Positions 1 to 28,162 of a stretch of 28,162 nucleotides of DNA are shown piece by piece. Below the pieces are notes generated by a model. It had not been told where the DNA came from, did no database searches, and worked only from the letters and a program-made list of their open reading frames with translations. Origin of the DNA: Macrostomum lignano (taxonomy: Eukaryota); NCBI GenBank assembly GCA_002269645.1, contig NIVC01005033.1, forward strand, positions 1 through 28,162, given 5' to 3'. A program made the translations under genes and the position numbers. Positions within the stretch are counted from its first letter, which is position 1, and each line of letters starts with the position of its first letter.

Positions 1-872
1 GCTTAGCCTGTAGGTCGAAGACGACCGCAGGCCCGCGAAAATCCGTTGCACTGCTGCACTCATGATCTGTGCGTCTCCTGGACTGAGAAACTTGCAGTAA
101 GCGAGCGCTGCACTCCGTTTGAGCAAGCGCTTTGAAAACTCGAGATTAAATTCGAATGGGTCAACTAGATACGGCCAAACTGTATGAGTTCAGAAGGGTG
201 CGCTAGGGGCTGAGGGCCAAGGGCCAAAGGTCAAATTTTGCTAGGCTAGGAGGTGGGCCTATACTTGCATTCTTCTGAGGCGTTGGCGGGGCCAGTGCAC
301 GCAGTGGGTGTAACAATGAGTTGCGTTTGCCAGGTATAAACGCAGTCCCTGTACGTTCGGGCTAATTTTGTGGAAAGGAAGAAGTGCGCCCAGAATGCTA
401 ACTTGGCCCGGACCAACCAACCACCTTCCACACTATCAATGGAATAGAAACATGCCCCTGCCATAAGTGTACACTAATATGCCAGGGGTGTTGCTGGCTT
501 CAATTAGGGCAGTGAGCCTAATAGCTTGTGCGACATCACGTGGCACATTTATAATCACCGGCCTGCACTCTTATTAGCCTGCCCTGCAGGCAGGGTACTT
601 TAAATTTCTTACAGCGAGAAATATGCACTTTTGAAAGCTGAGAGGCTGAATGAAATTTTGCTCAACGCAATTAATCGAAAAATGTAGTTCCCATAAGCTG
701 GAATTGATACAGTATAACACTGCACTCAGTTCGAGAATCTTGATTTGTCTATGGCCTGCCCTCTCGAGCTGATTCCAACTCTTTGTCAAAGAATTTATTC
801 TAGATCTTGTAAATAAATTACTATAAAGTACTCTAGATTAATACTTATCAGCTAATGATCAGCATTTTGTCT

Positions 873-914
873 CAAGGACCACTAGGAACACTTCGTATAG
901 TCTAGTAGTCCTTG
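873..914. repeat. 13-bp-stem inverted repeat, copy 1 (CAAGGACCACTAG-N16-CTAGTAGTCCTTG)
   Basis: The arms are reverse complements with one mismatch. The same arms recur at 5439-5481. Confidence 0.75.
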
Positions 915-1096
915 GTTTGTCTATGGCCCGCAAGGCGAGTTTAGAATGTCTATGGCCTGACGGCCAGTACAGTCAGTCGTAGGAGGGTCAGCTAAAAACA
1001 GATCTTAACAAGTGCGACAGAAGCCAGCTGCTCAAATCCCAAAGTGTCTCTGAATTGAAACTGATTTTTCCGAGTCTTACTTGAACAAACAAAACA

Positions 1097-1317
1097 ATGG
1101 CTCAGCTCCAGCTCCTTATGCTGCTCATCGCCATCATCGCGTTGCTAAGTGAGTAATCATTTCTTTGAATTTCATAATTTCTCATTCAATCATCAGCCTC
1201 ATTGTCTAACGCGCGATTTGTCCGTCTGCAGTTCCAGGTCTCGCCGAAGGCTGCTTTGAGCGCAGCATCAACAGACTGGATCAAGACGAGGATTTCAGAA
1301 AGAAGCGATCAGTATGA
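1097..1317 (+). CDS. Small secreted prepropeptide, 45 aa (exons 1097-1148, 1232-1317): MAQLQLLMLLIAIIALLIPGLAEG-CFERSINRLDQDEDF-RKKR-SV
   Basis: Hand translation. GTGAGT donor at 1149, CTAAC branch point at ~1206, CTGCAG acceptor ending 1231, phase-1 junction in frame. Hydrophobic signal peptide ending A-E-G, an RKKR polybasic site, TGA at 1315-1317 and AATAAA at 1434-1439. Confidence 0.7.
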
Positions 1318-2155
1318 GCGAGCCGTGTCTGCGGTCCATTGACTATGAAGACGATTGATGAATTTCAATTGTTTTTTCGAGTTCTTTATTTGTTTCTTTA
1401 AGCTTCCTGTTTAGCCAGTCTATTATTCATCCAAATAAAATATTGAATATTAGAAAGTTGAGTCAAAAATGGTTGGCCATAAGCGCATATGTTTCTTTGA
1501 CGCCTTTGAGCTACGAAAATTGTTGATGGGGAAGCGAGAGCTCGGCTTTTGCTGGAAAGTTGTTTTTGCCAGTTTTTCGTGTCCGCAAGCCCAACGAATC
1601 CTGCATCGATTTTTCATCAATCCACCCAAACACGAAGGTCGCTCTTGCTACTTAAAGTAGCAAACACTGCAAGGCCAATCGAAAAGTAAAAGAACAAATG
1701 CAGCACAAGGCAAGAGAGGCCAGTTTTCGGTCTCTGATGAACTGCAGGGAAATGAAAAAGAAACTTTCTGTGAAAAAGCAACAGTTACAAAAAAATATCG
1801 GCATCTTAAGAGTTGCAGCAAATGAAGGCTGACTTTTTACCTCTGCCAGCTCAGTCTCAGCTGTACTGCTCTGATGGATCTGCTCGGATAATCAAAAATC
1901 TATTCCCTACTTCCTTTCCTGGAATCTGGGTGTCATGGATACGAATCAATAAAAAACTGTAGACAAACAACCACTGCTCTGCTATCTAAACGGTTAGGGT
2001 TACATTAAAATTCATACTCTGCCAAAACTTTTTTCTAATAAAAAATGGAATGTCTTGCATTTCATTTGAAAGATTTCATCATAGGCAGTGCCCGCCACGG
2101 GAAGGCTCTCAAGTTTCCCCTGGAGCGGCAACGGGAATGAGTTTCTATTTATTTT

Positions 2156-3510
2156 GAGAACTGCACAATCTCACTAGAAATCTCTTTGAAAACTACAAAA
2201 ACCCACTAGAAATCTCTATGAGAACTGCACAATCTCACTAGAAATCTTAATGAGAACTGCACAATCTCACTAGAAATCTCTTTGAAAACTACACAATCTC
2301 ACTAGAAATCTCTATGAGAACTACACAATCTCATTGGAAAATCTCTATGAGAACTACACAATCTCACTAGAAATCTCTATGAGAACTACTGCACAATCTC
2401 ACTAGAAATCTCTTTGAAAACTACACAATCTCACTAGAGATCTCTATGAGAACTACACAATCTCACTAGAAATCTCTTTGAAAACTACACAATCTCACTA
2501 GAAATCTCTATGAGAACTACACAATCTCATTGGAAAATCTCTATGAGAACTACACAATCTCACTAGAAATCTCTATGAGAACTACTGCACAATCTCACTA
2601 GAAATCTTAATGAGAACTGCACAATCTCACTAGAAATCTCTATGAGAACTGCACAATCTCACTAGAAATCTCTTTGAAAACTACACAATCTCACTAGAAA
2701 TCTCTATGATAACTACTGCACAATCTCACTAGAAATCTTAATGAGAACTGCACAATCTCACTAGAAATCTTAATGAGAACTGCACAATCTCACTAGAAAT
2801 CTTAATGAGAACTGCACAATCTCACTAGAAATCTCTTTGAAAACTACACAATCTCACTAGAAATCTCTATGAGAACTGCACAATCTCAGTAGAAATCTCT
2901 TTGAAAACTACACAATCTCACTAGAGATCTCTATGAGAACTACACAATCTCACTAGAAATCTCTTTGAAAACTACACAATCTCACTAGAGATCTCTATGA
3001 GAACTACACAATCTCACTAGAAATCTCTATGAGAACTGCACAATCTCACTAGAAATCTTAATGAGAACTGCACAATCTCACTAGAAATCTTAATGAGAAC
3101 TGCACAATCTCACTAGAAATCTCTATGAGAGCTACACAATCTCACTAGAAATCTCTATGAGAACTGCACAATCTCACTAGAAATCTCTATGAGAACTGCA
3201 CAATCTCAGTAGAAATCTCTATGAGAGCTACACAATCTCACTAGAAATCTCTATGAGAACTACACAATCTCACTAGAAAATCTCTATGAGAGCTACACAA
3301 TCTCACTAGAAATCTCTATGAGAACTGCACAATCTCACTAGAAATCTCTATGAGAATCACACAATCTCACTAGAAATCTCTATGAGAACTACACAATCTC
3401 ACTAGAAATCTCTATGAGAACTACACAATCTCACTAGAAAATCTCTATGAGAACTACACAATCTCACTAGAAATCTCTATGAGAACCACACAATCTCACT
3501 AGAAATCTCT
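2156..3510 (+). repeat. Minisatellite, 32-bp unit GAGAACTRCACAATCTCACTAGAAATCTCTAT, about 42 copies
   Basis: Directly visible tandem array with a few recurring variants of 32-35 bp and no spacers. Confidence 0.97.
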
Positions 3511-3648: not shown

Positions 3649-3654
3649 TATAAA
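3649..3654 (+). promoter_or_regulatory. Candidate TATA box of the lectin gene
   Basis: TATAAA about 100 nt upstream of ATG 3756. Positional inference only. Confidence 0.35.
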
Positions 3655-3755
3655 CACAGGAGCTTGCAAGAGGACTGTCGTGAATGCCCTGGTGGAGCCC
3701 CGTTGCAATAAGTCAGACATTTAAATTTCAACAAGTCAGATCGAGGAACTCCAGA

Positions 3756-4514
3756 ATGCTGCTGCACGCCCTGCTGCTGCTGTGGGCGGCGCCTCCGCAG
3801 CTGCTGTCCGAGTCCTGCAGCTCCCCCAGAGCCGCCTTCCACCCAACCACTGGCCTGGACTGCGTGAGCTCCGACTTCACTCGGACACTGTCCGGTCTGT
3901 GCTCACCGCTCGAGTGCAGCCACGCCTGCGCCAACAAGCGAAGCTGCCAGGCCTTCACGGTGAGGAGCAGCGGTGCCTGCCAGTGCAGGCTGTTCGAGTT
4001 CGACAAGTGCAGCCACCGCGTGCAGTCGGTGCCGAACTGCACCAACCAGGTGACTGTGTATGTGAGGTCTCTGCCTGGCGTGCCTCCGGGCCACCTGTGC
4101 CCGCCCAAATACCGGCATGCCAGGTACGGCACCTCCTACAAGCTGGTCACCGCGGGTGCTGCCACCTGGAGCGCTGCCAGCCAGAGCTGCAGCTCGGATC
4201 CCGGACTGTCCAAGTTCGCTGACGCAATCGACCTGGACGAAGCCGAGTACCTGCAGCTGCTGCAGCACCGAATCGCCAGCTCCAGCAGCTTCTTCATCGG
4301 CGGGCGCGCTGAGCAGCCCAGAAACAAATCGAACTGGTTCTGGACGGCCTGCCAGCTGCCCGTTGACCCGACCGTCTGGCACTCCGGGGAGCCGAATACT
4401 GACGCACCGTCTGCCTGCGCCAGCCTCTACAGCGGTTTTTCGTCCGGTGGCCAGGACGATACACACTGCGATGCGGTCCATGGATTCGTCTGCGAGTGCC
4501 AGTCCGTGTTCTGA
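3756..4514 (+). CDS. Intronless secreted PAN/Apple-like + C-type lectin domain protein (~252 aa; an upstream in-frame ATG lies at 3684)
   Basis: Signal-like MLLHALLLLWAA. Cys-rich PAN-like block (CSPLECSHACANKRSCQAFTV...CQCRLF). CTLD motifs TWSAASQSC, FFIGG, WFW, WHSGEPN and DTHCDAVHGFVCE. Confidence 0.9.
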   Translation: MLLHALLLLWAAPPQLLSESCSSPRAAFHPTTGLDCVSSDFTRTLSGLCSPLECSHACANKRSCQAFTVRSSGACQCRLFEFDKCSHRVQSVPNCTNQVTVYVRSLPGVPPGHLCPPKYRHARYGTSYKLVTAGAATWSAASQSCSSDPGLSKFADAIDLDEAEYLQLLQHRIASSSSFFIGGRAEQPRNKSNWFWTACQLPVDPTVWHSGEPNTDAPSACASLYSGFSSGGQDDTHCDAVHGFVCECQSVF

Positions 4515-4824
4515 AGTGATAGCTAATAATGTCTTGTCGTTTTGTTCTGTGCACTTGTGGTATTCTGCTGCATCGTCATTGTTATCGTGACAGAGTTGTT
4601 ATAGGATGCAGAAGATGCAATATCGTTATGTCGACTCACTTCGCTTTTGTCCTTCTACAAGCCTGTGGAGGCACAGGGTTAAGGCTGAGAATGAGAATAG
4701 CCGCTCGAATTGCTTTTTCAACGCAAAAGCTTTCAGATTTCACTGGTAGAACTGCCTGTCTCTTTACTGAATTGAGATTCAACTGCAGACGAATTTCTAC
4801 TTCAAAGCACGCATCAGTGAGCTC

Positions 4825-6034: not shown

Positions 6035-6519
6035 GACTTACTTGACTTAGCTGCAGGGGGCTTCGCGCGTCCGGAAACAGCGAGGAGGCGTTGCCGCCCA
6101 TTTCGCTAGCCCCTGGCGACCACGGGCAGCTAGTGCTGCGGTGTCGCGCAGGGAGTTCCGGTGGTGCCGGCGTCCGCAGCGCGGTCCCCCTCCGGAGTGT
6201 CCAGGAGGTGGATGTTCGCTCGCCCAGTAGCCCTTAGGTAGCGGACGAACTGGCAGAGATTCTCGGGCCTGAAAACGTCGGAGAGGTCCGGGTTTGGGCC
6301 GAGGTAGGTGAGCCTGTCCTGAGTAAAGGCGGGGCATTCACAGATGAAGTGCTCCGCATTCTCGACACCGGAGAGGCAGAAAGGGCATTCCTCACTGCGG
6401 ATTTTCTCCTGGAGGTAACGATGCCTGGCAAAGCAGCCATGACCCGAGAGGGCCATGGTCACCGCCCTGATGTCCCTGCGGTTAAGTCCAAGCAGGGCCC
6501 TGCGTAGGGCGGAGGAGGG
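6035..6519 (-). mobile_element. 5'-truncated non-LTR retrotransposon (LINE, I/R1/Loa-like ORF2 C-terminus)
   Basis: Encodes ...LNRRDIRAVTMALSGHGCFARH...ECPFC...ENAEHFICECPAF..R, the C-terminal CCHC knuckle region of ORF2. Short tandem tail (TAAGTCAAG)x2 on the minus strand at 6032-6049. Flanked by a 13-bp direct repeat TGGCAGTCCGCTT at 6022-6034 and 6520-6532. Confidence 0.88.
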
Positions 6520-7269
6520 TGGCAGTCCGCTTAGTTCTTCAGAAGCTTCTAGAGTTCGTTTTTTAGCTCGGAAGACCAATGATCGCGTCGGTTCGGTTTG
6601 TGACTGCTGCCTCTCATGGAATGGACTATTCAAAACATTTAGCAAGTTTTACAAGACCGCTATATTACGGACAGACGTAAAATCCGCGTAAGTTTTCCGC
6701 GTTCACAGATCTTCTGGATAGAGACTACCGACAAACGGAACTACTAAGGTAACACTTCAAGGAATTGACTGAATTGGGTCTACTTGGGCCTTAAAAAAAC
6801 AACTGAGCACGTGTTGCATGTAACGAGCGAACCTCTATCGCTCCATCGATGAAAACCTGTGTGTACTTGTGTGATAGTATATGTTAAATATCGAATATAG
6901 GATAGTGGAGATTGAGTGTGAATGGAGTTTAATCATCGGTGAAAGTGCACAGCAGAAGATGCTTCCATGCAGCGAATGACCCGTGTATTATGACCGTAAA
7001 TGAGTTTTTAATTGCGCTCATTTATAGATTGAACTGCTTGGCGTTACTGTATTTTAGGCGACGCTGGATATTTATTTAGGTGTCATTGTAAAATTTTTAG
7101 CTTTTCTCAGCTCGTTTCCAGTCTAGATGAGTTCACGGAGCTCCTACGAGTACTTTAGCCTTATCAGTCATCAAGGGATTCTAATTCTAATGGGAATTGT
7201 CAGCAGTCAGTTTGCAGCTCCTGGTTAACATAGGTAATGCTCCTGTCAGAGAAATCTATTGAGCAGCCG

Positions 7270-8743
7270 TCAATGACCAATGCAATCGGCGAATAGGGTG
7301 AGCAGTCTCAGTCGAACCCAGCCGTGCTCACTGCCTACACTGGCAGCAGCTACTGTGGAGCAGTTGCTTCCGCCACAGAAGGAGCCACCGCCGCCTCCGG
7401 CATGCTGCGGACTCACTCCAGCTCCACCTCCGCAGTAGCCGCCGCCGCCGCCGCCCGCCCCAGTCGAAGAAGCTCCTCCGCCCCCACCGAATCCGCCATG
7501 GCCAGCGCTGCCGGCTCCGGCGCTGCCGCCGATCCAGCCTGCAGTGCGGCCGCTTCCTCCCTCGCCTTGTTTCTCATCGGTTCTCCCTCAAGAAGCGCTG
7601 TCCATCCAGCCAGCTCCGCAGCCACCTGCGTCCTGAGAGCTATTAGCCGGACCATTGCTTCCTGGGTTGCCGCCAGCTCCTCCAGATCCCCTTTTGTCGT
7701 TGTCATTGCCAATCGAATCGCCTCCTTGGATGTTAATCTCCGTTCCACCTAAAACAAATTCGATCTTATTGGATTTCAGCTGTAAACTTAGCAGCGTCTT
7801 GTCGAAATAAAATTTACCTTGGTTGAAGCGCGAGGCGCCTCCGCCTCCGCCCGCCGCGATCAGAAGCTCGCTGTTGTCACTCCGGTACGCGAAGCTGCCT
7901 CCACCTCCGCCAGCTCCTGAGTTTTTATCGTTGACCGAGCCTCCAGACTGGCCAACCACAATGACCAGCTGGGTGCCGGCGCTCAGGTTGAAGCTGCCAG
8001 CAGTGAAGGCGCCGACGCCTCCGAGCTTGGACTCGAAGGAATTCGCTCCACCATTCGCTCCCGCGGCTTCGATGCGATAGCAGCCTGTCAGGATGATTTC
8101 CATCGTCTGGATTGAACCGTTTCTTCCCGTGCTGCTGTCTGCAACCATCGGGTTCGAGCTTATGTTTAATTACTATTTAAAGCTTATCAAGATCGATGGC
8201 ACACTTGCATCCGCTCATTACTCACTCGAGAAAGTCCTGGTGAATGCAGACGCGTTCAGAGCTCTAGACTGGATCAGCTCACGCAGATCCTTCGCAGTCC
8301 ACGTCCGAGCTCCGGGCTCCGACCCGAGCAGTCTCTTCACGTGGCTCTCCGGAGATCCAGGGACCTGAGACGCGTCATTCACGATGGCGAGTTGGCAGAC
8401 GCTGTCCGTCTCGATGACAACGGCCACCGCGCAGTGGCGCATTCGGCACAACATCAGGCAGCTGGGCACAGAAGCGACACCCGTGATGTTATGAGCTTGC
8501 TGCTGGTGGTTGCGTTAAGGAGAAGGGCGCCGTCATGGGGTAGGTAGTTCACGCTGCAGGCTGCAAGGTGCAGTTAAATCAATAAGCCTCGACGTTAATC
8601 ATGAAATTAATGTCATTAAAAAGCTTGACTGCATGCATATTGCAATCCAAAAAATAACCTTGTCCGACTCCAATCAGCAAAGGTTGAATCGCAAGCACCA
8701 GCCATAACACTGCGACCATTTTTCCGTCTGTCAGATATGCCAT
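7270..8743 (-). pseudogene. Secreted PAN-like + ALK/LTK-type glycine-rich-domain gene, apparently disrupted (exons ~8743-8659, 8560-8222, 8158-7818, 7748-7270)
   Basis: Signal peptide MVAVLWLVLAIQPLLIGVGQ. PAN-like SCLMLCRMRHC...VCQL. GRD hallmarks TGCYRIEAAGANGG, LVIVVGQSGG, GGGGGSF, LLIAAGGGGG, GGFGGGGG, GGGGGYCGG and GWVRL. In-frame TGA at 7588-7590 and a frame change between ~8460 and 8514. Two donor sites are weak. Confidence 0.7.
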
Positions 8744-9825: not shown

Positions 9826-10706
9826 CTGAGCTTCATCTTGCTCTGGTAGAAAGCATGCATGTATGTTTGTGCGATTCTCACAGTTTTTTAGCGTCGTACA
9901 GCCTGACAGCCTAAACCATCGGTACATGTAAATTGCAGCCCTTTCACTTTAACTGGTGCTTTTGACCTAGATGTACACATACTATGTATAAATTTAGGAC
10001 ATGTGCATGTGCGAGACTGCATGCATTGCAATGCCTTTGCCTTTTAACAATTTGTTTTTTCTCAATTACATTCATAAATTTGTTAACCTTAAGTCTTGTA
10101 CGCCTTTTCTTTTTAGGACCTTCTGTAATATTCTGTCACGGGGCCCCTGCATGCGCATCGCGCTACATATGTAACAGTAGTGTATTTTATAAAGAATACA
10201 TTGTGAGGGTCTCCGGCCAAAATATGCATGAAAGAGACATAAGTGTAATGATTTAGATTTAAAATTGATGAAAATCAATCGCTGATCTCTGTCAATAGTG
10301 GGAAACCACACTCATTCAGTTTTGTTGCAATGTCCGGATTGGGTCCTGCTACATAGCTTTACGGTCAACTTTAAAATAAGCTAAACTTTAAGCAGGAAGA
10401 GAATACTTGAGAATAGGATAAATATTTTTCAACAAAAAAATTTACGAAGATTTTTAGGTACAATACGCTCTTGGAAACTAAATTTATCATGTCTAATTTA
10501 GTTTAAACACTAACTTTTTTTGAACTCTAAACTTTGCTAGAAATAATCTAGATCTAGATCCAAATCATGGATGGTTGTCTGCCAATCTACAAACATTCAA
10601 ACATTATGTAATACAAATTTAATTGGACGCTAATATAGAAAACTGCCAAATACAACTTTCTATCGCAGATGCCTTGATTTTTCAAGAAAAGTCTGAATAT
10701 ATTGTC

Positions 10707-13316
10707 ATGTCGGCATCGTCATCATCGAACTTAGTTGACAAAGTTGTCCGAATAAAAATTTCACGTGGACTCAACGACGAAGTTACAGTTGATCCCGAGA
10801 ATTTCGAAGATTATAACTTGTTTGATAAGTCAAATCTACCAATCCGATTTCATGATATATACAAAGAAAAAAAGACCATCATTGTGTTTTTGAGGGTAAG
10901 TTTTTAGTATATTTTATATTATACATGTATTTTTAGGCAGTTGTTATTGTTATGGTGACCATATAAACAAAAAATGTTTTTTTGTAGGCCTATAGTCAAC
11001 ACATTAAACAGTTACTATCTAAACTAGGTAACGAAATTGTGAGTGTGTATATAATATGAGGCTATAAATACAGTAATTAAAAAATAAAGAAATGAGTTTT
11101 TAATTATTGATAGGGGGCCTACAATGTGACTAGGTGACTGGTGGTTCATATAATTGACTTTAACTAGCTTAAATTTTGAACCTAACTTTAAATGTTTATG
11201 AAAATTCTTCCAACATAAAAATAGCCATTTTGCTTCTAATTAAAAATAGATATTTTTTTAAACCAAGTGTAAAGTTGCCAACTTTTTGGCCAACTTAAGT
11301 TGCCAACTTAAAAAAAACTATTAGAATTTTTATTTTGGCATACACTTATTATAATCTAGACTATAGGGTCATATACTTTGTAGTAAATGATAAAAGCTGC
11401 CTTTTTATTGAACCAACCTCTACTTTGTTCTTTTTCAAAGCTTTCAACTATCTGCTATACCCCTAGATATTCTATAATAAGCTTATTAGTATTATGTATA
11501 ATTATGATAGCCTAGTAATATTCTTATACTATTGGCAATATTGATAATACTTTTTGGGTATTAAATATCAGAAGCCTTATAAGTCTATACTTTTAAAAGT
11601 ATTAGACTTTATTAACTTCTAATACAATTTTTCAATTTTCCAATAGTTTAACAGTCCTATACCATTCCCATTGAACCCAGTTGGAATAAGTGGACAAATA
11701 GTCAAAGAACTAAGCAATTTAATTTGTTTAGTGATAGCTGCCTATACATTTTTTGAAAATGTTATATGCATCTTAATATATACTTGGTTTAAACAACTTA
11801 ACCTATGTAGCTATGGTCAATGCTTAGAAAAATGATAGAAGATTGCATCTAAATAATAAAATTACCTTCTCTGATATTTTTGTACTAAAGAAAATGATTT
11901 ACCTTTTTTATATTTAGAAAACTAAAGAAAGCTAATCCTCATCAAACACTTTAGCACCCACAGTGCTTTGCTGCCAAAGAGTACATGGAGGACTTGGCAA
12001 CAATACCTGATGGTGTCCTGCAGCAAGCCAACGTTCAACTTGTTGCGGTTGTGCCCAGCATGCCTGAGCTGCTGTCGGTATGTCTGATTTGTGTTGCTTT
12101 TCATGAGTTTCACCATTGCTGTTCTTGTCTTTATTTATCAAATTGCTTAAATATTTTTCCTAGCTGAGAGCAATTCAACACTTTGCAGGTGTTCAAAGAG
12201 GAGACTGGCTTTAGGCATGCACTTTACTGCGACCCCAGTGCTAACATCTACAGAAAAATTGGCTTTAAATGCGGAGTTGTGCCGCATGACCAATGTGAGT
12301 TATTGAGAACTGCATGATAACACTTGAAAAAGGACCGCATATTTGAAATAGCTCTCTAATCCTCTCCCAGACCCTCAGTTGCTGGGCCACTCACCCTCCC
12401 AGATGCTTAGTTGCTGGCCAGCCACTCTCTCACTCTCTCAGATCCTCAGTTGCTGGCCAGCCACTCTCTCACTCTCTCAGATCCTCAGTTGCTGGCCAGC
12501 CACTTTCTCACTCTCTCAATCCTCAGTTGCTGGCTAGCCACTCTCTCACTCTCTCAGATCCTCAAGTTTCTGGCCAGCCACTCTCTCACCCTCAGATCCT
12601 CAGTTGCTGGCTAGCCACTCTCTCAGATCCTCAGTCTGGCAGCCACTCTCTCATCCTCCTCAGTTGCTGGCCAGCCACTCTCTTACCTCTTGCTCCAGCC
12701 ACTCTCTCAGATCCTTTGCTGGCCAGCCACTCTCTCACTCTCTCAGATCCTCAGTTGCTGGCCAGCCACTCTCTCAAGATCTCAGTTGCCAGCCACTCTC
12801 TCAGATCCTCAGTCTGCCAGCCACTCTCTCAGATCCTGTTGCTGGCCAGCCACTCCTCAGATCCTCAGTTGCTGGCCAGCCACTCTCTCACTCTCTCAGA
12901 TCCTCAGTTGCTGGCCAGCCACTCTCTCACTCTCTCAGATCCTCAGTTGCTGGCCAGCCACTCTCTCACTCTCTCAGATCCTCAAGTTGCTGGGCCGGCC
13001 ATCCCAGATCCTCACTCTCAGCAACAGACCCGCCGCCCCTGAACGCCCAGCAGACCCGGTCAACAACAAGCACGTGAAGTCCAGCTGGATGTTAGGCGTC
13101 CTGCGCAGCACCTACCGCACGGCCGTGCTTTACCGGGACTTCAACGCCGACATGCTGGTGAACGGCGGCTGCCTGGTGCTGGGGCCGGGCCGGCAGCTGC
13201 ACTGCAGCCACCTGGACAACGGCATGTTCGACCAGATGCCCATCAACAGCCTGCTGGAGCGAGTCTGCGGAGTCACCATGAGCTTCCCCAAGGACCGGCG
13301 CGTGCTGCACCTCTGA
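10707..13316 (+). CDS. PRXL2C: Peroxiredoxin-like 2C / AhpC-TSA antioxidant enzyme domain protein (exons 10707-10895, 11955-12077, 12189-12294, 13051 or 13054-13316)
   Basis: Canonical GT-AG junctions in compatible phases. The spliced protein reads TIIVFLRHPQCFAAKEYMEDLATIP...ANVQLVAV...LYCDPSANIYRKIG...KHVKSS...NGGCLVLGPG..LH..H.D......PINSLL, matching the AAED1/PRXL2C family pattern. Confidence 0.88.
12368..13020 (+). repeat. Intronic minisatellite, 39-bp unit TTGCTGGCCAGCCACTCTCTCACTCTCTCAGATCCTCAG, with truncated variants
   Basis: Visible tandem array in PRXL2C intron 3. It explains the LLASHSLTLSDPQ repeat ORFs. Confidence 0.95.
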
Positions 13317-14079
13317 TTCACCGAGGCTGTCATCAATTTTTTCAGGTCTGCTGCGTTTATTGACAAATTTGTATTGCGGTAAGCAAAAAGTCAAGTCCTA
13401 GTTAGTCAGCAAGATTTCCAGTATTCTCATCATTTGTGTTTCTCTGATAGATTTTAAATACAAGTGCAATGAAGTATTGTTTTGTTCGGCAGTAAATAAA
13501 ATATCTTTAATTGCATTAAGCTCTTTGATTCATTTCTCTCATCTCTCATCTCTTCTCTCCCGTCTCTCCTCTCATCTTCTCTTACCGTATTTTGTGTCTG
13601 CTCTCTTCTCCTTTATTCCTCGCCTCGCCTGTTCCCTCCCTCTCCTCCCGTTCTGGAGAGCACTTTTGCCAGACGCGGTCTCTCACTAATGGGCAGCTGC
13701 AGCTAAATGCACTTCATGCAGCGATAGGACAAATGTGCCATACTGGGCTCTGGTTCATTTCTAAGATATCGAATGCAATGTCCTGCTTCATTATTGTCAC
13801 TAGAATAGTGGTGCACTTGAATTCCACTCACTCTAGTACGTGCAAATACTTGCTACTGTAAGTTTAGGTCTGTTTCATGTTTATACAGTAATGGTTTTAA
13901 TAAAGATGCATGATGTAAAGAATTTCAAACTGAAAACGAAGACTATAGAGCTTTTCAGTTTTATTAACTTCCTGTAGGAAAAGATCTGGCCATGCAGCCA
14001 AGCTACACGCGCGTCAGAATGTGAAATTAAATGAAATCATACTATGCATGCTTTCATTGCATTTTGAGCTGGCTAAAGG

Positions 14080-14683
14080 TCACGGGTGGCTCTTCGCAGC
14101 CAGAGGCGGTGGGAAGCCTATAAATGTTCTTTTCAGGCCGTGGAATAAAGGCGCTTGAGTTTCCTGCTGGCGTAACTCCACCTTCAGATCGGATTTCTCC
14201 CGGACTATTGAACACCTTCCGGGTTCAGTCGGGGCCTGACGCTGTCGCTGGTCGGTGCATTCGCTTTCAGCCGGCTGCAGTGGCTGCTGCTGACTGTCCA
14301 GTCTGAGGACTGCCATTCTTTTCGTCAGCTCGTCAACCTGAGCCGCTTCGAACTGCAGTCGAAATCGATCAAACTGTACCGATCTGCTCGTTTAAATTTC
14401 AATAAACTAAATAGCCTCGATCAGCTCCTTACCTGACGCCGACGGACTTCGGTAGAATCCTCCACGAGATGTCCACCGTGCCGCAGCTGATTCGCCCACA
14501 GTCTAGCAGTGAGCTGCGGTGCGTACGATATTCAAAGGATTTATCACTATTCAAAAGAGGCTTTAAGGTCATCCAGCTACACGTTTTGCTGGGGATACAG
14601 GCTGGAAGTGTGGCGAGACTTACACAGAGCTGGTAACAGTGCGAATTTCGCGGTGGCAACGGCGGCTGCATGGTGTCTGACAT
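14080..14683 (-). CDS. Possible orphan gene, ~184 aa (exons 14683-14433, 14383-14080), no recognisable domain
   Basis: A 49-nt GTAAGG...GCAG intron (14432-14384) joins two ORF-track ORFs in compatible phase 2 and removes the stop of the first. No homology recognised. Confidence 0.35.
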
Positions 14684-16884
14684 TCTGACACGGCGAGAAC
14701 TGTTGAACTCGGGGGCCTTAATTGCATAATAAATTATGCACCAGCTGTAGATAATGGCTCACTTCCACGTGCCGATGCCAACTGCGTTTCGTGATAGACT
14801 TTGCAGCACTACATGTATGTACTGCTTCAAACGCAATTGATAATTACGAGTATATGATTAACTAATTCAAGCCATAGACAGCTGGACCAAATGAATGTAT
14901 AGAGTAGTGCATTTTATCGGATCCCGTTCATGTACATTTTTGAGCTCCATGGTGGGTCATATTTAGATAGAAATGGGTCTGGGTCTTTATCGAGTGACTG
15001 TTCTTGGTCATGACCACGAGCTACATGTATAACTTATAGTTTCATTGTACAGTAGTCAAGCCGACAGTCGATCCACAGCCGTTGTCACACACGTTTCGCG
15101 CTGAGCAGCTCACCCGCTAGCTCAACTTGAGCAGAAAACGGAACACTTTAGAGGTAGTGAAAGGACGAAGGAATTAGATTATGAGCACCTGGTGCGACGC
15201 CTTCGGCGAAATCATCTCTTAGTGCGATATGGATCCAGGATTTTTCCGGGAGTCATTCACCCTCTAATTTTTTCGAACCCCTAGACTTCCCTGAATCTGG
15301 ATTCAAGCCCTGCTAATGTATATGGCCGGCCACAAGGTAGAAGTTGATTGCATCTCTCTATTGCAATTTTTGCGCCAGGCACGATTTTCTAAACAAAGCT
15401 TCCTAAGCCCTGCGTGTCTACTCGTAGAGTCTTCGCGTGACAGCCCATGTCTCGTAAATACTTTAAAGCCAGGTTCGGACACTTACACTTACTCGAAAGC
15501 GTGGATCACAATTAAGCCGCAGACCACTCTTTTATCAGAAAAGGCCACGACAAAAAAACTTTAGAAATTAAAAATTAATAAATCAGTCAACTACAGCCTT
15601 GATCAAAGTGACTGCCCCCGCTTTCACTGGTGGTGCCTCTTGTCACTCTCTCCTTGATGTACTCTATTGAAGTCTTCTAATCTTGTTCCTTTGAGGACTT
15701 GTTTCACTTTGGGGAAGAGGTCCAACTCTACAAGCTGTCTTTGGCTTTGGCTCACTGGAAACGCCTTGTGCGATGTGGCAGTGTAGTGATGTAGCAACCA
15801 GCCATTGTTCTCCCATTGTTCGCAATATGTAAAATAGATGCTTTGACTTTAACTTTGAATTTGACGATCTTTGACATTGTCCCGCTTCCAATTTGAAATA
15901 AGCATACACAGCAAGCAGGTCAATGACACTGTTTGATCTATATGATACTATGATAGATAGTTGATTGATTTATTTAATTTCTGTTCTAATGTACAAAAAT
16001 TAAATCGGTTTTTAGTAGTTCTCGCCTTGAGTCCAGCAAAAGTAAAAAAATAATTAAGCAAACAATATGCCAGCTACAGATAATTATGAATTAATAACTT
16101 TAGTCACGTGACAGCAGACATGGCACACAGCTGCTGGATAGCGGTATATATAAGTCCAGAAGCAAGTTAAGTTAGTATGCAGTCAGTTGCGGATTCGATC
16201 TGCTCAATTAAAAGCCACCTCTTCGACCAGTGTCTCCAGTGAATATTCGAGCAGTTCAAATTCCGACACTGATACTCTCAACAGATTAAGCAGAAAAAAC
16301 AGGCCAGATAGCTGTGTATAACAGATTTTCTATTTTTAATGTACAAACAAAAGTGTTTTCGAAATAAACTCATTTGTAAATAAATAAATATACGCATAGC
16401 CCGATGAAAACGGTAACCCAGGACAAGAAGCCTCTCAGAGTAGTTGCAGGTAACACAGGTAAAATAGGAAAGAACTGACTCTAGCCAGACGACGAGATGT
16501 CACGGAAGAAAGTCGCCAGAAAGTCATCGAAGAGAAGAATGACTCTGTTTAGTCTACTTGAGTAAGTAGAATGTTAAGCGCTAACAATGACTCTTTCGTG
16601 ACTCAACAGTACAATCGTTTTGAGTCCTTAAAACAGTCGCCCCAGAGTGCGTTGTTTGCAATGAATTCTTGAACGATTCTTGTCCCAGTAACGTTTTCAA
16701 CGCATAGGAGAAAAATTACAAATATACTATTAATAGATGTTCTATATAGAAAGGTAACGCGCATTTCTGCTCTCTCCTATCTGCCTGTCTGTCTGAAAAC
16801 AATAATTATGTCCATGGGAGATTTGCTGTTTATTTGGTGCATGCTTAGACACAGGTGGGGGCCATCCAGCTGGTGATTGACAGC

Positions 16885-19564
16885 TCAGGTGGCCCAGGCC
16901 TCCAGCTCGCGCATCTCGTCCTCCTCGGACTTCGCTCCGGCCGGCTTTTTAGCGGCTGCGGCTTCCGGCTGGCCGCGCGGGGCGCTCGGCAGCTCCGGGA
17001 CGCTGGTGCCGCCAACGTCAAGAAGCTGCTTGTCCAGGTCCTCCTGCTCCAGCTCCTCCAGCTCCGCCAGCAGGTCGTCCTCGTCGACATCGTGACCGAA
17101 GCCGGCGGGACTGCTAATGGCGTCGCTGATCTCCTGGGCGATCTCCTGCTGCTCGTGGATCTCGTCCATCACGTCGTGCACCTGCGGGAGCGGCAAAGAG
17201 CCGGGCTGCGATCTGGATCTGCCAACTGAGGGTCTGGATCTGCGAGCTGAGGGTCTGGATCTGCCAGCTGAGGGTCGGGATCTGCCAGCTGAGGGTCTGG
17301 ATCTGCCAGCTGGGGGTTGGATCTGCTAGCTGAGGATTTGGAACTGCTAGCTGAGGGTCTGGATCTGCCAGCTGGGGGTCTGTCTGGATCTGCAAGCTGA
17401 GGGTCTGTCTGGATCTGCAAGCTGATAGTCTGGATCTGCCAGCTGAGGGTCTGTCTGGATCTGCAAGCTGAGGGTCTGGATCTGCTAGCTGAGGGTCTGT
17501 CTGGATCTGCAAGCTGAGAGTCTGGATCTGCCAGCTGAGGGTCTGTCTGGATCTGCAAGCTGAGGGTCTGGATCTGCTAGCTGAGGGTCTGGATCTGCCA
17601 GCTGGGGGTTTGGATCTGCTAGCTGAGGGTCTGGATCTGCCAACTGAGAGTCTGGATCTGCAAGCTGAGGATTTGGATCTGCTAGCTGAGGGTCTGGATC
17701 TGCCAGCTGAGGGTCTGGATCTGCCAGCTGAGGGTCTGGATCTGCCAACTGAGAGTCTGGATCTGCAAGCTGAGGATTTGGATCTGCTAGCTGAGGGTCT
17801 GGATCTGCCAGCTGAGGGTCTGGATCTGCTCCCGAATGCTGACAGCATTGAATCCTGGCACCAGTATGCAAGTTTATCCTCTAACTTGAACAGAAAACAC
17901 ACCTGATCGATATTGAGATCCTGGTGAGCAGATTTAAGTGACTTGGCGGCCACTTGCATGGCCTTGAGCACTTCGGTGTTGGTGCTGGCGTTCTCTAGGG
18001 CCTCACGCTGGAATTCGATGGTGGTCAGGGTGCCGTCGATCTGGGTGAGCTGCTTCTCATACCGCTTCTTCCTGGCCAGAGCTTGCAGGGCCGCTGTGGT
18101 GTTGAGACAAGTTTTTGGCGGATGGTCAGTTTAGTGTGAGAGAGAGGTTGTGAAAAGCATGTCTAGGTCAAGTTTTCTGCATAAGCCCCAAATTAATGCA
18201 GCCATGCATAGAATCAAACCAAGAGATATTGCTCAAGGTCAATCATTATTTAAGAGACTAGGATATAAAATGCAATCATTATTAGTATTAGCTAAAAACA
18301 GCCTAAATTTATTTATATGTTACTTTATATTTTTTGCTTTGATTTCATTCTCTTTCCACAAGGTCATTTTTTGTACTATAAGAATTTTTATAATATATTA
18401 AAAATTAAAGTGTTTGTTTTTATATATATAGTAAGCCTATGAAAGCATTTCTATAGTCAAAAATACAATAGCATGGGACCTTTAAAATAAAATGCATTTG
18501 AGGCCAATATTAAAGTCAAGCTTAACCAAGTTAAGTTAATCTCTGCTTATTTTTTATTTTGATTCTATATATAATACTAGTCTTTAGATAACTAGATACC
18601 CTAGGCTTAATGTTAAATTATGCAAGCTAAGAAAGTATGTATATCTGATTCTAAGTTAGTTAATTTTTTAAATATTAATTTGTAATAAAAAATTAGCTAC
18701 CAATGGCAATGCATATTAAATGATTAATTTACTCAGTTATCTAATATTTTTAAACTTAATAAATAAAGAGAACTATTTAGTTGGAGTTAAATTGAATAGA
18801 TAATAAGTAGAACAGAAGGCCTAAATGAATAAAATATGTAAGACAACTAGGAAGGGCTTGAATATAGATAATTAAAAAGGACAAAGGCAAAGCATGCAAC
18901 TAAGGAAACAGATAAAATTGAATAGCCTATTATTGATTGGTTTATGAGTATAAACAATAATATTATAAAACCTAATATAATATAATAAATACTCCAAACT
19001 AAATATTAGATTTCAAGAGTCAATCAAAAAGCAGCAAAAGAATGATAAGAAAAACAATTTTGAACTGACAGGGGGAGAGAAAACAGAAAGTCAAAACAAA
19101 AAATGCATATAAAAAATCAATAGATTATGATGGTCATTTTTGGTATAAAAAAGATAGGCCTAACTAACCATCTAAATTAAATTCTAACTAATATATATTT
19201 TTATTTTCTTGAAATAACAAGACAAAACATTCATATGAAAAATAAAAATAAAAAATAAATTTACAATAGATTGATCATGTATTTCGCCTAGCCTATACCA
19301 TGATTGCAGAGCAGTCTGAAATGGAGGTCTTATTAGGCCTATTACTAAGGCAAAGCATAAGCTCAAGGAAAATAAACAATAGCAAATCCACATACCTCGT
19401 TTGTTCTTTGTTCCATGTTTCTTTGCTTGCGTAATTTCTTCGTGAATTTTCTTTTCCAAAAACTGCGACTTTTTATTTAACATTTCTTCTGTGTTTCGCA
19501 ACCTCTGGATCGCCTCTTGTGGAGACTCAGACTTCTCCTTCTTCTTTCCGAATAGAAAAGACAT
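16885..19564 (-). CDS. CHMP4: ESCRT-III subunit CHMP4/Snf7, 218 aa (exons 19564-19396, 18093-17903, 17181-16885; probable 5'UTR intron 19670-19580)
   Basis: MSFLFGKKK...PQEAIQRLRNTEEMLNKKSQFLEKKI...KHGTKNKR-AALQALARKKRYEKQLTQIDGTLTTIEFQREALENA...VHDVMDEI...DEDDLLAELEELEQE...ELEAWAT. All junctions are GT-AG and in phase. Confidence 0.97.
17211..17830 (-). repeat. Intronic minisatellite, 21-bp unit (sense AGCTGGCAGATCCAGACCCTC) with 25-bp variants
   Basis: Visible tandem array in CHMP4 coding intron 2. It explains the DPQLADP and SRPSAGR repeat ORFs. Confidence 0.95.
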
Positions 19565-20705
19565 TGTTCTCAACAATAGCTAAATTAACAAAAAGGACAA
19601 CAATTCTGGATGACACAAAACAGCTTAACGAGGCTGGACAACGCCTTGTTTTGCTTTTTGCTTTACTTACAATAAACTCTACAATATAGCAATGCAATCT
19701 AAAATAGCAGTTAACATAGCAATTTCGAATTAGTGCGTTATATTCATCAGCTAGCTTAACAAAGTTTTTTCCTTTCCTGTCAATATAAGAATAAATAATT
19801 TTTGAAAAGTGGCAAAAACTATACTTATTTGACAGTTTTTTAGTTTTTTCTTTCTGAGTACCTGTTTTTTCATCCCTGAATATGTTGTTCAGGCTCTAAA
19901 AGTCTTTTAGCCGGATACATTAACTTTTAACTATTTCGTGACTGAACTGAGCAATTTTAGACAAACTATAGAGTAGGACGCTATTATCTGGGAATCCTAC
20001 AGATTTTGCAGATTTTCCTGCAGATTTTCCCAACGAATTCCACAACGGACTTGCTATTCCACAATATTCTAATTCTATAATAATTACATCGCTAAATTGA
20101 CTGCTGTGGCGGCCCAATCAGCACGCAGCCAGCGATTGCGAGTACATCTGCACTGAAACCCCCTGCCCGCCAAGCTGGGGGTGGGTGTACTCGGACAGAC
20201 AGTCAATATGCTTAGTCGGGGGGGGGGGGGGTTCGTGCCACCTTTTTGGCGCGCCTCCCCATGTGATCGCGTGCTTATTTATACCTGACGCGTCAAGCTA
20301 ATAAACTTTTACTTTTCCTGCTTGCAACTTACTTTATTTTTCCGCAAACTGCACATGTACTTGTTGATTTTGTGCGTGTAGCTCGTAGATGTACGAGTTC
20401 GAATTTTGAGTACTGATCTTGGAGATCAGAAAATCAGTAATTGCAAGTTGCTCTAAAATATATCCATCCCAGTTGTCTATTTGCGTGTTTGATTTCTTAT
20501 ATAAAACGCATTTATCCCTATGCAGACCCTGAGTGCAAAAAAATATTTTTCCGCGTTTAGAAATAACAATGTCGCGCCAAAATTCGATGAAAATTTACTC
20601 GGATTCGATCAATTTTATATAGCAAACAGCGTCATTGATTTATATCAGACCTTGGGTTTGTCTAGAAAAAATTATCAACAGGTTTTCTTGTAAGTTTGGT
20701 ACGAA

Positions 20706-22350
20706 TCAAAATAACGAGCGCATTATCCCCTCAATTCTTCTGCGACAAACCAAGGCATTCGGCTCTGGAACGACCGAACGAGACAGCTCAATGATGGCAA
20801 GAGCAACAACTATGCCCATTGAGGTTGCAGCGAATGCGCCGAAGTACACTTTGTCAGTGCCGGTGACGACGGCGGCCCAGTCGTTGGTCGTTTTCGGTTG
20901 GACAGTCATCCGGCTGGGTGATTCCGCTGGGTGCTGCTGCGACTTCGGACTCAGCGTAACAGCTACTGAGCCCTTTGCACGCGGGCTGCCTTTCTGCACA
21001 AGCCGGTTGAGAAAGAGAGCGCGGATTAGCTGGTTGCTGACGCGAGCGCTGCTGTGCTGCTTAAAGTGGCAGCTGATGACGAATGCGTTGCAGAGGACGT
21101 TCAGAATCGTCATGAGCACGGCCAAACTGAAGTATAGGGCTGCAATTACATGTTAATGATTACCGTTAGTTCCTGATGGGAAAAATTTAATAACGCACAC
21201 GTGACTCACCGATGAGCGGCACGGACTCGCTCTGCGTAGGCGTGTAGTTGCCAGCCAGCTGCAGGAACACGCACATGGACAGCACGATGGTGATGCTGAA
21301 GGAGACTCGCTCGCCGCACTCGAGTGGCATGCGGAATGCGAGCGCAGAGATGACGAGGAGAAGGATGCTGGGCAGCATCAGGTTCACCACGTAGAATGTC
21401 GGCATCCTCTGAAAAAAATTGTTTCCCTGCGCTCAATCGGTGAATTTGAGTCCCCACTTACACCCGATGAGGAAATCTTACAGTGGACGATATTTTCAGT
21501 GCCGCAGCTTCAAATGTGATTTCTCCTCGCCAGACCAGCTTCGCATCCGTGATGCAGAACTCGTTGCTCTTGGAAATCTCGTCAGTTAGCGTCAGGTTTA
21601 GAAAGAAGTCCTTTGTGCGCAAACTTGATCGCACTGCTGGGCTATAATGAGCTGCCAGTTTGGACCTCGCAGGTCGGAACATCGTACGGAAGCCGAACAT
21701 GTGCATGCGGCGCTTCGATGTCACGACTAGCTGGGTGCCGCGAACCACCCAGCTTGAACTTTGCAGCACCACGATGACTCGCTCGTCGGAGACTCGCTTG
21801 TAGCTTAATCTGTAGTGGGAAAAAGTCTTTTATAGTATCCTATGCTTTAGTATATATATTAACAGAGAGTATGATTTCTCGAAAGTTTCAAACACATCAT
21901 AAAATGAGACATCGGGCTGCCAAAGCAGGTCTGCTGGGAGGAAAATCATGTCAGTGCCATCCAGACTGGAGTTGAATCGACCCAGCCAGGAAAGGCGGCT
22001 GTTCTTCCAATACTTAAATGGTACGTGAATTATTCAAAGGGGTAATTGATTGACAAAAATCAGTATACTCGTAAAAGAACACGATCTCCTGAGCTGCAGA
22101 GTCCTAAAATGATTGCGATGCAGTTTTAATTCAGAGACCAACAGACACAGGCTCCGCGAGGACCTGGTATTGACCTTCAACCGAAAGTCCTAATCAGTCT
22201 TACCACTTTAATACGGCTGCTCAGGTGCACGAAACCTGACCGTATTGGCTGTCCCATTGTCCGGCGGAGGCCGGATGGCGCTGTTGTACTCTGAGGCGAG
22301 CTTCAGCGTTGCCACCACCTCGGCGTCGGGCGATGCGGGCGAAGCAGAGG
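20706..22350 (-). pseudogene. Cys-loop ligand-gated cation channel subunit (nAChR/5-HT3-like) with a disrupted extracellular domain (exons ~22350-22204, from 22103, 22012-21894, 21809-21482, 21408-21210, 21139-20706)
   Basis: YNSAIRP, YWKNSRLSW, LWQPDV, split Cys-loop remnant MHMFGF/PYDVPTC, M1 RMPTFYVVNLMLPSILL, M2 CGERVSFSITIVLSMCVFL, SESVPLI, M3 and M4 (DKVYF). Several frame changes in the extracellular exons. The TM exons are clean. The 5' end is not resolved. Confidence 0.8.
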
Positions 22351-23482: not shown

Positions 23483-23978
23483 ATGTCTTCTCAGAAAACA
23501 AAGAAGTCTGTCAAAGATCTCGACATGAACCGGCGAGATCCGCAGGACGTGAACATCCACCTGCAGGTGAGTGAATCGAGTCAAGCACGAGAATGATTAG
23601 AAATCCGAGGAGTGCAATAAATCACTGCCGATTTGCTCACACAAGGTGGAGTTCGATGACATCCTGGCCGAGCCCGAGGGCGCCTACTCAATCAACTGCG
23701 TCTGGCGCTGCTCATACCGCTGCTACGAGTGCTGGAAGAACTGCTGGTACCGGACCCTCACTCTGCTCTGCGGCTGCTGCATCGCCGCCATGTGGGGCTG
23801 CCACTTCGCCGAGTTGGCCTTCTGCCACGTCTGGTGCTGCACGCCGTACCTGAAGAGCTACATCATGGACATCAAGATCATTCGCGAGATGAACGCGGCC
23901 TGTTACGACGCCTGCCTTGGCACCTGTTGCTCAGCCTGCGGCAACTGTTTCAGTAGAATCCGAGTGCAGCAGAACTGA
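23483..23978 (+). CDS. Caveolin family protein A, 138 aa, Cys-rich (exons 23483-23566, 23646-23978)
   Basis: RDPQDVNIHLQ-VEFDDILAEPEGAYS matches the caveolin signature (DP..IN.H.KV.FEDVIAEP). 79-nt GTGAGT...AAG intron in phase 0. Confidence 0.93.
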
Positions 23979-27936: not shown

Positions 27937-28162
27937 CCTGTTTGAGCGGATTTCCAGGCTTTTCAGGGAGGCAGGTGAGGAGCAGGAGAGATTCCAAGGC
28001 GGCTGTGTCCAGTCCCGACAGTTCAACAATATATTATGCCAGACAAGCGAGGGAAGAGTTGCCATTGGTAACAAACTGCCGAGAGGGGTATGCAGGCTGT
28101 ACGCCCAATGTACATTTGGACTGATGGGGGAGAGGGAGGGACAGAGAATGCAGAGTACGTAC

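What the first reader, a model, noticed from the sequence alone, without database searches (positions are those of the whole stretch)
1097..1317. Hidden 45-aa prohormone-like gene below the ORF-track cutoff
Splicing an 83-nt intron with textbook donor, branch point and acceptor gives signal peptide + CFERSINRLDQDEDF + RKKR + SV-stop, followed by AATAAA. Signal peptide plus a polybasic convertase site is the established architecture of neuropeptide and secreted-peptide precursors. I do not recognise the predicted 15-mer, which has a single N-terminal Cys that could dimerise or be lipidated. GTATGA at 1312 could alternatively be a donor extending the protein.
Basis: partly seen in the sequence, partly recalled or inferred. 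Interest (0 to 1): 0.72.

Follow-up and report, generated by a model that had tools for sequence, protein, structure and literature searches.

The report
Unannotated tiny secreted-peptide gene candidate
A short stretch of the flatworm Macrostomum lignano genome has the signals of a real but unannotated two-exon gene for a 45-residue secreted peptide precursor, but no expression or conservation data could be reached, so it is a plausible orphan micro-gene and not a demonstrated hormone.

Summary
ATG 1097, an 83-nt GTGAGT…CTAAC…CAG intron (1149-1231), a 45-codon spliced ORF ending at TGA 1315-1317, and AATAAA at 1434 are all present. The window is the whole contig NIVC01005033.1 of Macrostomum lignano, where neighbouring genes have 75-79-nt introns and the species consensus is GT[G/A]AG/CAG. 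ATG 1097 is the only ATG on either strand followed by a strongly hydrophobic core. None of 300 simulated windows gave a spliced model of that strength. Exon GC is 0.50-0.54, against 0.39 in the intron and 0.33 in the 3' UTR. Three exact TGTCTATGGCC copies lie 140-350 nt upstream.

This is very unlikely to be chance. It most likely is a small secretory gene: a cleaved signal peptide, a 21-residue propeptide and a furin-type RKKR site.

Codon usage is only intermediate. No homologue exists in any searched collection. That absence says little, because the GenBank annotation drops "non-coding" and repeat-overlapping transcripts and also lacks the obvious lectin gene next door. The homeologous contigs could be reached only to window position 7298, so conservation is untested.

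The peptide is acidic, not amidated and single-copy, so "prohormone" is unsupported. Verdict: probable new member of a known kind, modest interest.

The parts
746..957 (+). Cluster of three exact, same-orientation copies of TGTCTATGGCC (746, 918, 947), 140-350 nt upstream of the ATG. Possibly a regulatory site cluster (inferred).
   Evidence: 3 exact copies here, 0.4 matches (<=1 mismatch) expected per window; none in about 60 kb of related loci.
955..1096 (+). 142-nt stretch free of ATG before the start codon, with an in-frame TGA at 1082-1084. Candidate 5' UTR; the transcription start is unknown.
   Evidence: Read directly.
1097..1148 (+). Exon 1 coding part: MAQLQLLMLLIAIIALL plus the first base of codon 18. 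This is the n- and h-regions of a signal peptide.
   Evidence: Core LLMLLIAIIALL has mean KD 3.48; it is the only such ATG in the window.
1149..1231 (+). 83-nt phase-1 intron: GTGAGT donor, CTAAC branch-point-like motif at 1206-1210, pyrimidine-rich tract and CAG acceptor. Alternative in-frame acceptor at 1237.
   Evidence: Neighbouring caveolin introns are 79 and 75 nt. Species consensus is GT[G/A]AG / CAG (PMC8629364). Intron GC is 0.39 against 0.50-0.54 in the exons.
1232..1251 (+). End of the signal peptide: c-region (I)PGLAEG, with small residues at -3/-1 (A22, G24). Predicted cleavage before Cys25; after A22 is the alternative.
   Evidence: Sequence and the -3/-1 rule (established knowledge). 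No SignalP was available.
1252..1296 (+). Predicted mature 15-mer CFERSINRLDQDEDF (net charge -3, one Cys, no C-terminal Gly).
   Evidence: No match in any search.
1297..1308 (+). RKKR, a furin/proprotein-convertase consensus (R-X-K/R-R).
   Evidence: A furin motif in spliced models occurred 0.007 times per simulated window at the loosest threshold.
1309..1317 (+). Ser-Val followed by the TGA stop. GTATGA at 1312 is a weak alternative donor.
1318..1439 (+). AT-rich 3' UTR (GC 0.33) ending in AATAAA at 1434-1439.

Best explanation
A genuine, unannotated two-exon gene of Macrostomum lignano that encodes a 45-residue secretory pre-pro-peptide.

Proposed mechanism (inferred):
1. The mRNA is spliced at 1148/1232.
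2. The N-terminal 24 residues act as a cleavable signal peptide. A precursor this short would have to enter the ER post-translationally.
3. The 21-residue product CFERSINRLDQDEDFRKKRSV travels through the secretory pathway.
4. A furin-like convertase cuts after RKKR, and a carboxypeptidase trims the basic residues.
5. This releases an acidic, non-amidated 15-mer with one free Cys, which may dimerise through a disulphide.

Most likely it is a lineage-restricted, fast-evolving secreted peptide of unknown target, not a conserved neuropeptide.

Shown: the sequence signals and their improbability by chance. Inferred: transcription, splicing, translation, cleavage and secretion.
For: - The coordinates and the translation are exact.
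- ATG 1097 is the only ATG on either strand with a strong hydrophobic core. The joint pattern was absent from 300 simulated windows.
- The donor sits directly after the h-region, in phase 1. Only the 83- or 89-nt intron restores a c-region with an A-x-G cleavage site and a hydrophilic tail. All other acceptors give featureless products.
- Intron length and motifs match the neighbouring genes (79 nt GTGAGT…AAG, 75 nt GCGAGT…CAG) and the species consensus (PMC8629364).
- GC is 0.54 / 0.39 / 0.50 / 0.33 for exon 1, intron, exon 2 and 3' UTR. GC3 is 0.64. The codon score lies in the top 2.5% of all non-coding 135-nt windows.
- AATAAA lies 117 nt after the stop.
- The preceding 142 nt are free of ATG and carry an in-frame upstream stop.
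- A cluster of three exact 11-mers lies upstream.
- Its absence from the annotation is expected. The GenBank annotation of Mlig_3_7 excluded transcripts that TransDecoder judged non-coding and transcripts overlapping repeats (PMC5730564).
- Even the adjacent single-exon lectin gene is missing from the protein collection.
Against: - No transcript, junction or peptide evidence could be accessed.
- No homologue or paralogue was found anywhere.
- The codon-usage score is only intermediate: top 11% of stop-free non-coding windows and bottom 2% of windows from confirmed genes.
- Two of the three frames are open across exon 2, so its open frame alone means little.
- The n-region has no basic residue.
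- 45 residues is at the extreme low end for animal secretory precursors.
- The simulation thresholds were chosen post hoc.
Confidence: 0.5

Rival explanations
1. Not a functional coding gene. The signals belong to a non-translated transcript, to a decayed remnant of the 5' end of a former secreted-protein gene, or (least likely) to chance. No peptide is made.
For: - There are no homologues, paralogues or annotation.
- The codon score is intermediate.
- The ORF is very short, and another frame is also open across exon 2.
- The M. lignano genome is more than half repetitive and heavily duplicated (PMC5730564), so gene fragments are common.
Against: - The joint pattern was not seen in 300 simulated windows.
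- There is no trace of a longer decayed ORF: all frames close by about 1345 and a UTR-like AT-rich stretch with AATAAA follows.
- No protein in 5.8 billion clusters shares even three 5-mers with it, so it is not a copy of an annotated gene's 5' end.
- It is not repeated in about 90 kb of available M. lignano sequence.
Confidence: 0.3
2. One reading: a neuropeptide or peptide-hormone precursor. The 15-mer would be released by prohormone convertase in neurosecretory cells and act on a receptor.
For: It has the generic architecture of a signal peptide plus a polybasic site. Flatworms have many small, lineage-specific prohormones (own knowledge: Collins et al. 2010, planarian npp/spp genes).
Against: - There is no Gly before RKKR, so no amidation.
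- There is a single copy of a strongly acidic peptide, which resembles a spacer more than an active peptide.
- R-X-K-R is the furin (constitutive pathway) consensus, not a specific PC2 signature.
- No relative was found in any flatworm or other protein set.
- No literature hit for the sequence.
Confidence: 0.1
3. A single-pass membrane micro-protein. The hydrophobic segment (residues 4-21) is not cleaved but anchors the peptide, leaving a 24-residue charged tail ending in RKKRSV.
For: The hydrophobic stretch is long for a signal peptide (13 uninterrupted apolar residues, about 18 including flanks). The n-region lacks a positive charge. Many 30-60-residue micro-proteins are membrane anchored (own knowledge).
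Against: Pro19-Gly20 followed by A-E-G is a typical c-region with a -3/-1 cleavage site. There is no match to any Pfam family or solved structure.
Confidence: 0.07
4. The two exons are 5' exons of a longer gene. The weak donor GTATGA at 1312 would splice over the 32-nt minisatellite to the acceptor at 3800, joining …FRKKRS in frame to the mature part (LLSESC…) of the downstream PAN + C-type lectin.
For:: the junction 1311/3801 is in frame with the lectin ORF (237 further residues).
Against: - GTATGA departs from GT[G/A]AG.
- The lectin has its own TATAAA (3649), ATG and signal peptide.
- AATAAA at 1434 and the UTR-like composition argue that the transcript ends there.
- CAG is frequent in this GC-rich ORF, so one in-frame acceptor is expected by chance.
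- No acceptor from donor 1149 reaches the lectin frame.
Confidence: 0.04

Closest known systems
Very short animal secretory precursors, e.g. honeybee preproapamin (about 46 aa) and Drosophila short-form Bomanins (own knowledge, not tested here)
   Same: Total length of about 45 residues. A signal peptide takes up half of the precursor. The mature product is a 15-18-residue peptide. They are often lineage-restricted with no detectable homologues.
   Different: Those peptides are Cys-paired or basic and have demonstrated expression and activity. Here there is a single Cys, an acidic peptide, a C-terminal RKKR-SV extension and no expression data. There is no sequence similarity.
Flatworm prohormone genes (planarian npp/spp sets; FLP/NPF precursors)
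   Same: A signal peptide followed by peptide(s) bounded by basic residues. They are small genes, often missed by ORF-length cut-offs.
   Different: Most encode amidated peptides (Gly before the basic site), often in several copies, and are conserved among flatworms. None of these features is seen here.
Rapidly evolving reproduction-related secreted proteins of Macrostomum (tail- or prostate-region transcripts; PMC10468722)
   Same: Secreted, genus- or species-restricted, and prone to homology detection failure. This would explain the lack of any hit.
   Different: Nothing ties this locus to any tissue. The known examples are longer proteins.
Furin/proprotein-convertase substrates (R-X-K/R-R)
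   Same: An exact RKKR motif in the predicted luminal part.
   Different: Cleavage would remove only a Ser-Val dipeptide, so its functional meaning is unclear. The motif could instead be just a basic tail.

Membership tests
Spliceosomal protein-coding gene of Macrostomum lignano | Donor GT[G/A]AG and acceptor CAG at the junctions | tested here: met
   GTGAGT at 1149 and CAG at 1229-1231. Consensus taken from PMC8629364.
Spliceosomal protein-coding gene of Macrostomum lignano | Intron length within the range used locally | tested here: met
   83 nt, against 79 and 75 nt in the two caveolin genes of the same contig.
Spliceosomal protein-coding gene of Macrostomum lignano | Codon usage like that of confirmed genes | tested here: inconclusive
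   LLR is -4.7. The non-coding mean is -45 (-31 if stop-free) and the training-gene mean is +37.
Spliceosomal protein-coding gene of Macrostomum lignano | A spliced, polyadenylated transcript exists | not testable with these tools
   No RNA-seq or transcript collection is reachable. The GenBank annotation omits non-coding and repeat-overlapping transcripts.
Secretory (signal-peptide) protein | N-terminal n/h/c regions with small residues at -3/-1 | tested here: met
   By heuristic only: core KD 3.48, Pro-Gly break, A22-E-G24 before Cys25. SignalP was not available. The n-region lacks K/R.
Neuropeptide / peptide-hormone precursor | Basic cleavage site(s) flanking the peptide | tested here: met
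   RKKR at residues 40-43.
Neuropeptide / peptide-hormone precursor | Amidation signal (Gly before the basic site). Usual but not obligatory. | tested here: not met
   The sequence is …DEDF-RKKR, with no Gly.
Neuropeptide / peptide-hormone precursor | Mature peptide conserved in related species or paralogues | tested here: inconclusive
   No hit in 5.8 billion clusters, in 1.84 billion representatives or in the window and loci. Unannotated Macrostomum DNA is not in these collections, and the homeologous contig was reached only to window position 7298.
Neuropeptide / peptide-hormone precursor | Expression in neurosecretory cells and detection of the processed peptide | not testable with these tools
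   This needs in situ hybridisation and peptidomics.

The most novel reading that the evidence does not exclude
One of the shortest animal pre-pro-peptides (45 aa) is a real, Macrostomum-specific signalling or reproductive peptide. The product would be an acidic, non-amidated, possibly disulphide-dimerised 15-mer released by furin-type cleavage. It would be encoded by a gene invisible to standard annotation, suggesting a hidden class of such micro-genes in the M. lignano genome.
Probability: 0.12. Interest if true: 0.5.

Novelty: new member of a known kind. Interest (0 to 1): 0.3.

Why it matters
If real, it shows that the M. lignano annotation, which relies on a TransDecoder-style ORF call and a repeat filter, misses small secreted-peptide genes. 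Peptide signals matter for regeneration, stem-cell and reproductive biology in this model flatworm. By itself this is one orphan micro-gene of unknown function. Its value is mainly as a test case for a systematic small-ORF and peptidomic re-annotation.

Tried and rejected
1. Exact look-up of the 45-mer and of 21 window ORFs in the 15-billion protein collection found none on record.
2. The word-index homology search with the 45-mer found no candidate.
It gave two weak hits. The listed stretch of the better one covers query residues 2-16, mostly intron-derived, in a 1220-aa protein with four matched stretches. I judged them spurious.
4. Pfam and PDB sequence searches gave nothing significant. 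Rfam gave nothing in the window.
5. A literature search for the peptide strings gave no hits.
7. I tried to reach the candidate's counterpart on the homeologous contigs.
   - The caveolin P0001 gave four contigs, but only 10 kb of flank.
   - Stepping left with the 94-aa Snf7 product reached window-equivalent 7298 on NIVC01000301.1.
   - NIVC01000272.1 starts at window-equivalent about 10.7 kb and cannot contain it.
8. The idea that exon 1 serves as an alternative signal-peptide exon for the lectin is rejected. No acceptor from donor 1149 enters the lectin frame.
9. The idea that the locus is a repeat or transposon fragment is rejected for the material available.

Full report
**Identity of the window.** A caveolin exon in the window matches a Macrostomum lignano protein. 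That protein, P0001, is encoded on four contigs of assembly GCA_002269645.1. One of them, NIVC01005033.1, is exactly 28,162 bp long, and its fetched stretch (L004) is 100% identical to window 13483-28162. The window is therefore a whole contig of the free-living flatworm M. lignano (DV1 line, Mlig_3_7 assembly).

Three other contigs carry the same gene order. They are 99.9% (NIVC01000272.1), about 97% (NIVC01000301.1) and about 95-96% (NIVC01001427.1) identical to the window, non-coding DNA included. This fits the known chromosome duplication and assembly redundancy of this line (PMC5730564).

**The observation.**
- ATG is at 1097 in the context AAAACAATGG, and an in-frame TGA lies at 1082-1084.
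- Exon 1 ends at 1148.
- The intron (1149-1231, 83 nt) begins GTGAGT, carries CTAAC 21 nt before the acceptor, and ends in a pyrimidine-rich tract and CAG.
- Unspliced, the frame stops two codons after the donor.
- Spliced, it reads MAQLQLLMLLIAIIALLIPGLAEGCFERSINRLDQDEDFRKKRSV*.
- AATAAA lies 117 nt after the stop.
- A second in-frame acceptor at 1237 would give a 43-residue variant.

**Chance.** I scanned both strands for ATGs followed by a 12-residue hydrophobic core. I then looked for GT[AG]AGT donors, 45-150-nt introns ending in YAG, and a resulting ORF of 35-150 residues.

| Measure | Real window | 300 order-3 Markov windows (per window) |
|---|---|---|
| ATG with core KD >= 3.0 | 1 (ATG 1097; its core is 3.48) | 0.267 |
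| ATG with core KD >= 3.4 | 1 | 0.037 |
| Spliced signal-peptide model, KD >= 3.0 | 1 | 0 |
| Spliced signal-peptide model, KD >= 2.5 | 1 | 0.027 |
| As above plus R-x-[KR]-R, KD >= 2.5 | 1 | 0.007 |

The thresholds were chosen after seeing the candidate, so they are indicative only. Even so, the joint pattern is clearly not what this sequence composition produces by accident.

**Fit to the organism.**
- The two caveolin genes on the same contig have single introns of 79 nt (GTGAGT…AAG) and 75 nt (GCGAGT…CAG).
- A genome-wide study gives GT[G/A]AG and CAG as the dominant cis-splice motifs (PMC8629364).
- The intron is in phase 1 and sits just before the predicted signal-peptide cleavage site. 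This is a well-known preference of secretory genes (established knowledge).
- GC content is 0.54 in exon 1, 0.39 in the intron, 0.50 in exon 2 and 0.33 in the 3' UTR. GC3 is 0.64.
- Of all acceptors that keep a frame open from donor 1149, only those at 1231 and 1237 restore a c-region (PGLAEG, A at -3 and G at -1) and a hydrophilic tail. The others give featureless products, and none enters the frame of the downstream lectin.
- The 142 nt before the ATG contain no other ATG.
- Three exact, co-oriented copies of TGTCTATGGCC lie 140-350 nt upstream. About 0.4 matches are expected per window (that search also allowed one mismatch), and there are none in about 60 kb of related loci.

**What weakens it.**
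- A codon-usage log-likelihood score was trained on 706 codons of confirmed genes in the window. It places the candidate (-4.7) between non-coding windows (mean -45, or -31 if stop-free) and coding windows (+37). That is the top 2.5% of all non-coding windows, the top 11% of stop-free ones, and the bottom 2% of coding ones.
- A second frame is also open across exon 2.
- The n-region has no basic residue.
- 45 residues is very short for a secretory precursor.

**Homology.**
- The exact 45-mer is not among 15 billion proteins.
- No protein in 5.8 billion clusters shares three 5-mers with it.
- An exhaustive HMMER pass over 1.84 billion representatives used the contiguous reading 1210-1314. It gave two weak hits. 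The listed stretch of the better one lies mostly in the intron-derived residues, in a protein with four matched stretches. I judged them spurious.
- Pfam, PDB sequences, the paper library and a metagenome pattern scan were all negative.
- There is no paralogue in the window or in the fetched loci.

These negatives carry little weight. The deposited annotation excluded transcripts that TransDecoder called non-coding and transcripts overlapping repeats (PMC5730564). The collection also lacks the obvious single-exon PAN + C-type lectin gene 2.4 kb downstream. In addition, Macrostomum is known for fast-evolving genes with homology detection failure (PMC10468722).

**The conservation test could not be run.** The homeologous contigs are reachable only through exact products of called genes, with 10 kb of flank. 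Stepping from the caveolin to the 94-residue Snf7 product reached window-equivalent 7298 on NIVC01000301.1, at 97.4% identity. At about 3% divergence those copies would in any case give only a handful of substitutions over 138 nt. Other Macrostomum species are the informative comparison.

**Interpretation.** The most likely reading (about 0.5) is a real, unannotated micro-gene for a secreted peptide, working as follows:
1. A signal peptide of 24 residues is removed.
2. A 21-residue propeptide enters the secretory pathway.
3. Furin-type cleavage occurs after RKKR and the basic residues are trimmed.
4. An acidic 15-mer with one Cys is released.

Only the sequence signals are shown; every step of the mechanism is inferred.

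The specific 'prohormone' reading (about 0.1) lacks the usual hallmarks. There is no amidation Gly, the peptide is a single acidic copy, and no conservation has been shown. R-x-K-R is the constitutive-pathway furin consensus, not a neuroendocrine signature.

The remaining alternatives are:
- a non-functional transcript or decayed remnant (about 0.3);
- an uncleaved membrane-anchored micro-protein (about 0.07);
- 5' exons of a longer gene through the weak donor at 1312, which happens to be in frame with the lectin ORF at 3801 (about 0.04).

**Verdict.** The gene model is plausible and well beyond chance. Its function is unknown, and the hormone label is not supported. If real, it is a new member of a known kind, the small orphan secreted peptides. 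Interest is modest until RNA-seq junctions or cross-species conservation are checked.

Noticed in passing
window 3649-4530: A single-exon gene for a secreted PAN/apple-like + C-type lectin protein. TATAAA is at 3649, the ORF is 3684-4514, and a signal-peptide-like MLLHALLLLW starts at 3756. Pfam Lectin_C gives E=1.9e-6. It is absent from the protein collection, and the word-index search found no homologue at E<=1e-5. It appears unannotated in GenBank.
   Followed up: partly
window 2155-3510; 12390-13001; 17212-17829; 24484-25192; 26576-27101: Five large minisatellite arrays in 28 kb: 32 nt x42, 39 nt x16, 21 nt x28, 31 nt x23 and 16 nt x33. At least one lies in an intron: the 21-mer array sits between exons of the Snf7/CHMP4 gene. 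The 31-mer array lies between the two caveolin genes. Copy number differs between homeologous contigs.
   Followed up: no
window 23483-23978 (+) and 25531-26010 (-): Two caveolin paralogues, about 88% identical in protein, in convergent orientation. The second one's 75-nt intron uses a GC donor (GCGAGT).
   Followed up: partly
window 7588-8148 (-), continuing 7413-7748 (-): An ORF with an ALK/LTK glycine-rich domain (Pfam PF12810, E=1.5e-8), followed by a coiled-coil-like ORF. No gene is called there on the homeologous contig either.
   Followed up: no
window 6130-6645 (-): An ORF whose end (CPFC…H…CEC) resembles, by eye and from my own knowledge, the zinc-knuckle C-terminus of a non-LTR retrotransposon protein. 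Pfam found no family for it.
   Followed up: no
window 13487-28162 versus L002 (NIVC01000272.1): The right half of this contig is 99.9% identical to the first about 17 kb of a 440-kb contig. That contig starts at window-equivalent about 10.7 kb. The window contig is probably a redundant haplotig or an unmerged overlap that extends the larger contig leftwards.
   Followed up: partly
L001 3435-3719 versus L002/L004 3400-6080; L003 2141-5509: The Snf7/CHMP4 gene is annotated as 218 aa on three contigs but only as its 94-aa last exon on NIVC01000301.1. NIVC01001427.1 carries about 3.4 kb of extra sequence inside that gene relative to the window.
   Followed up: no
window 10295-13316 (+): A multi-exon peroxiredoxin-like gene (AhpC-TSA_2, PF13911). 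It is called as 226 aa on the homeologous contig, has AT-rich introns (GC 0.28-0.33) and contains the 39-nt minisatellite.
   Followed up: no
window 746-957: Three exact co-oriented copies of TGTCTATGGCC, within longer 21-nt similar units, lie upstream of the candidate gene. None occurs in about 60 kb of related loci. This may be a transcription-factor site cluster.
   Followed up: partly
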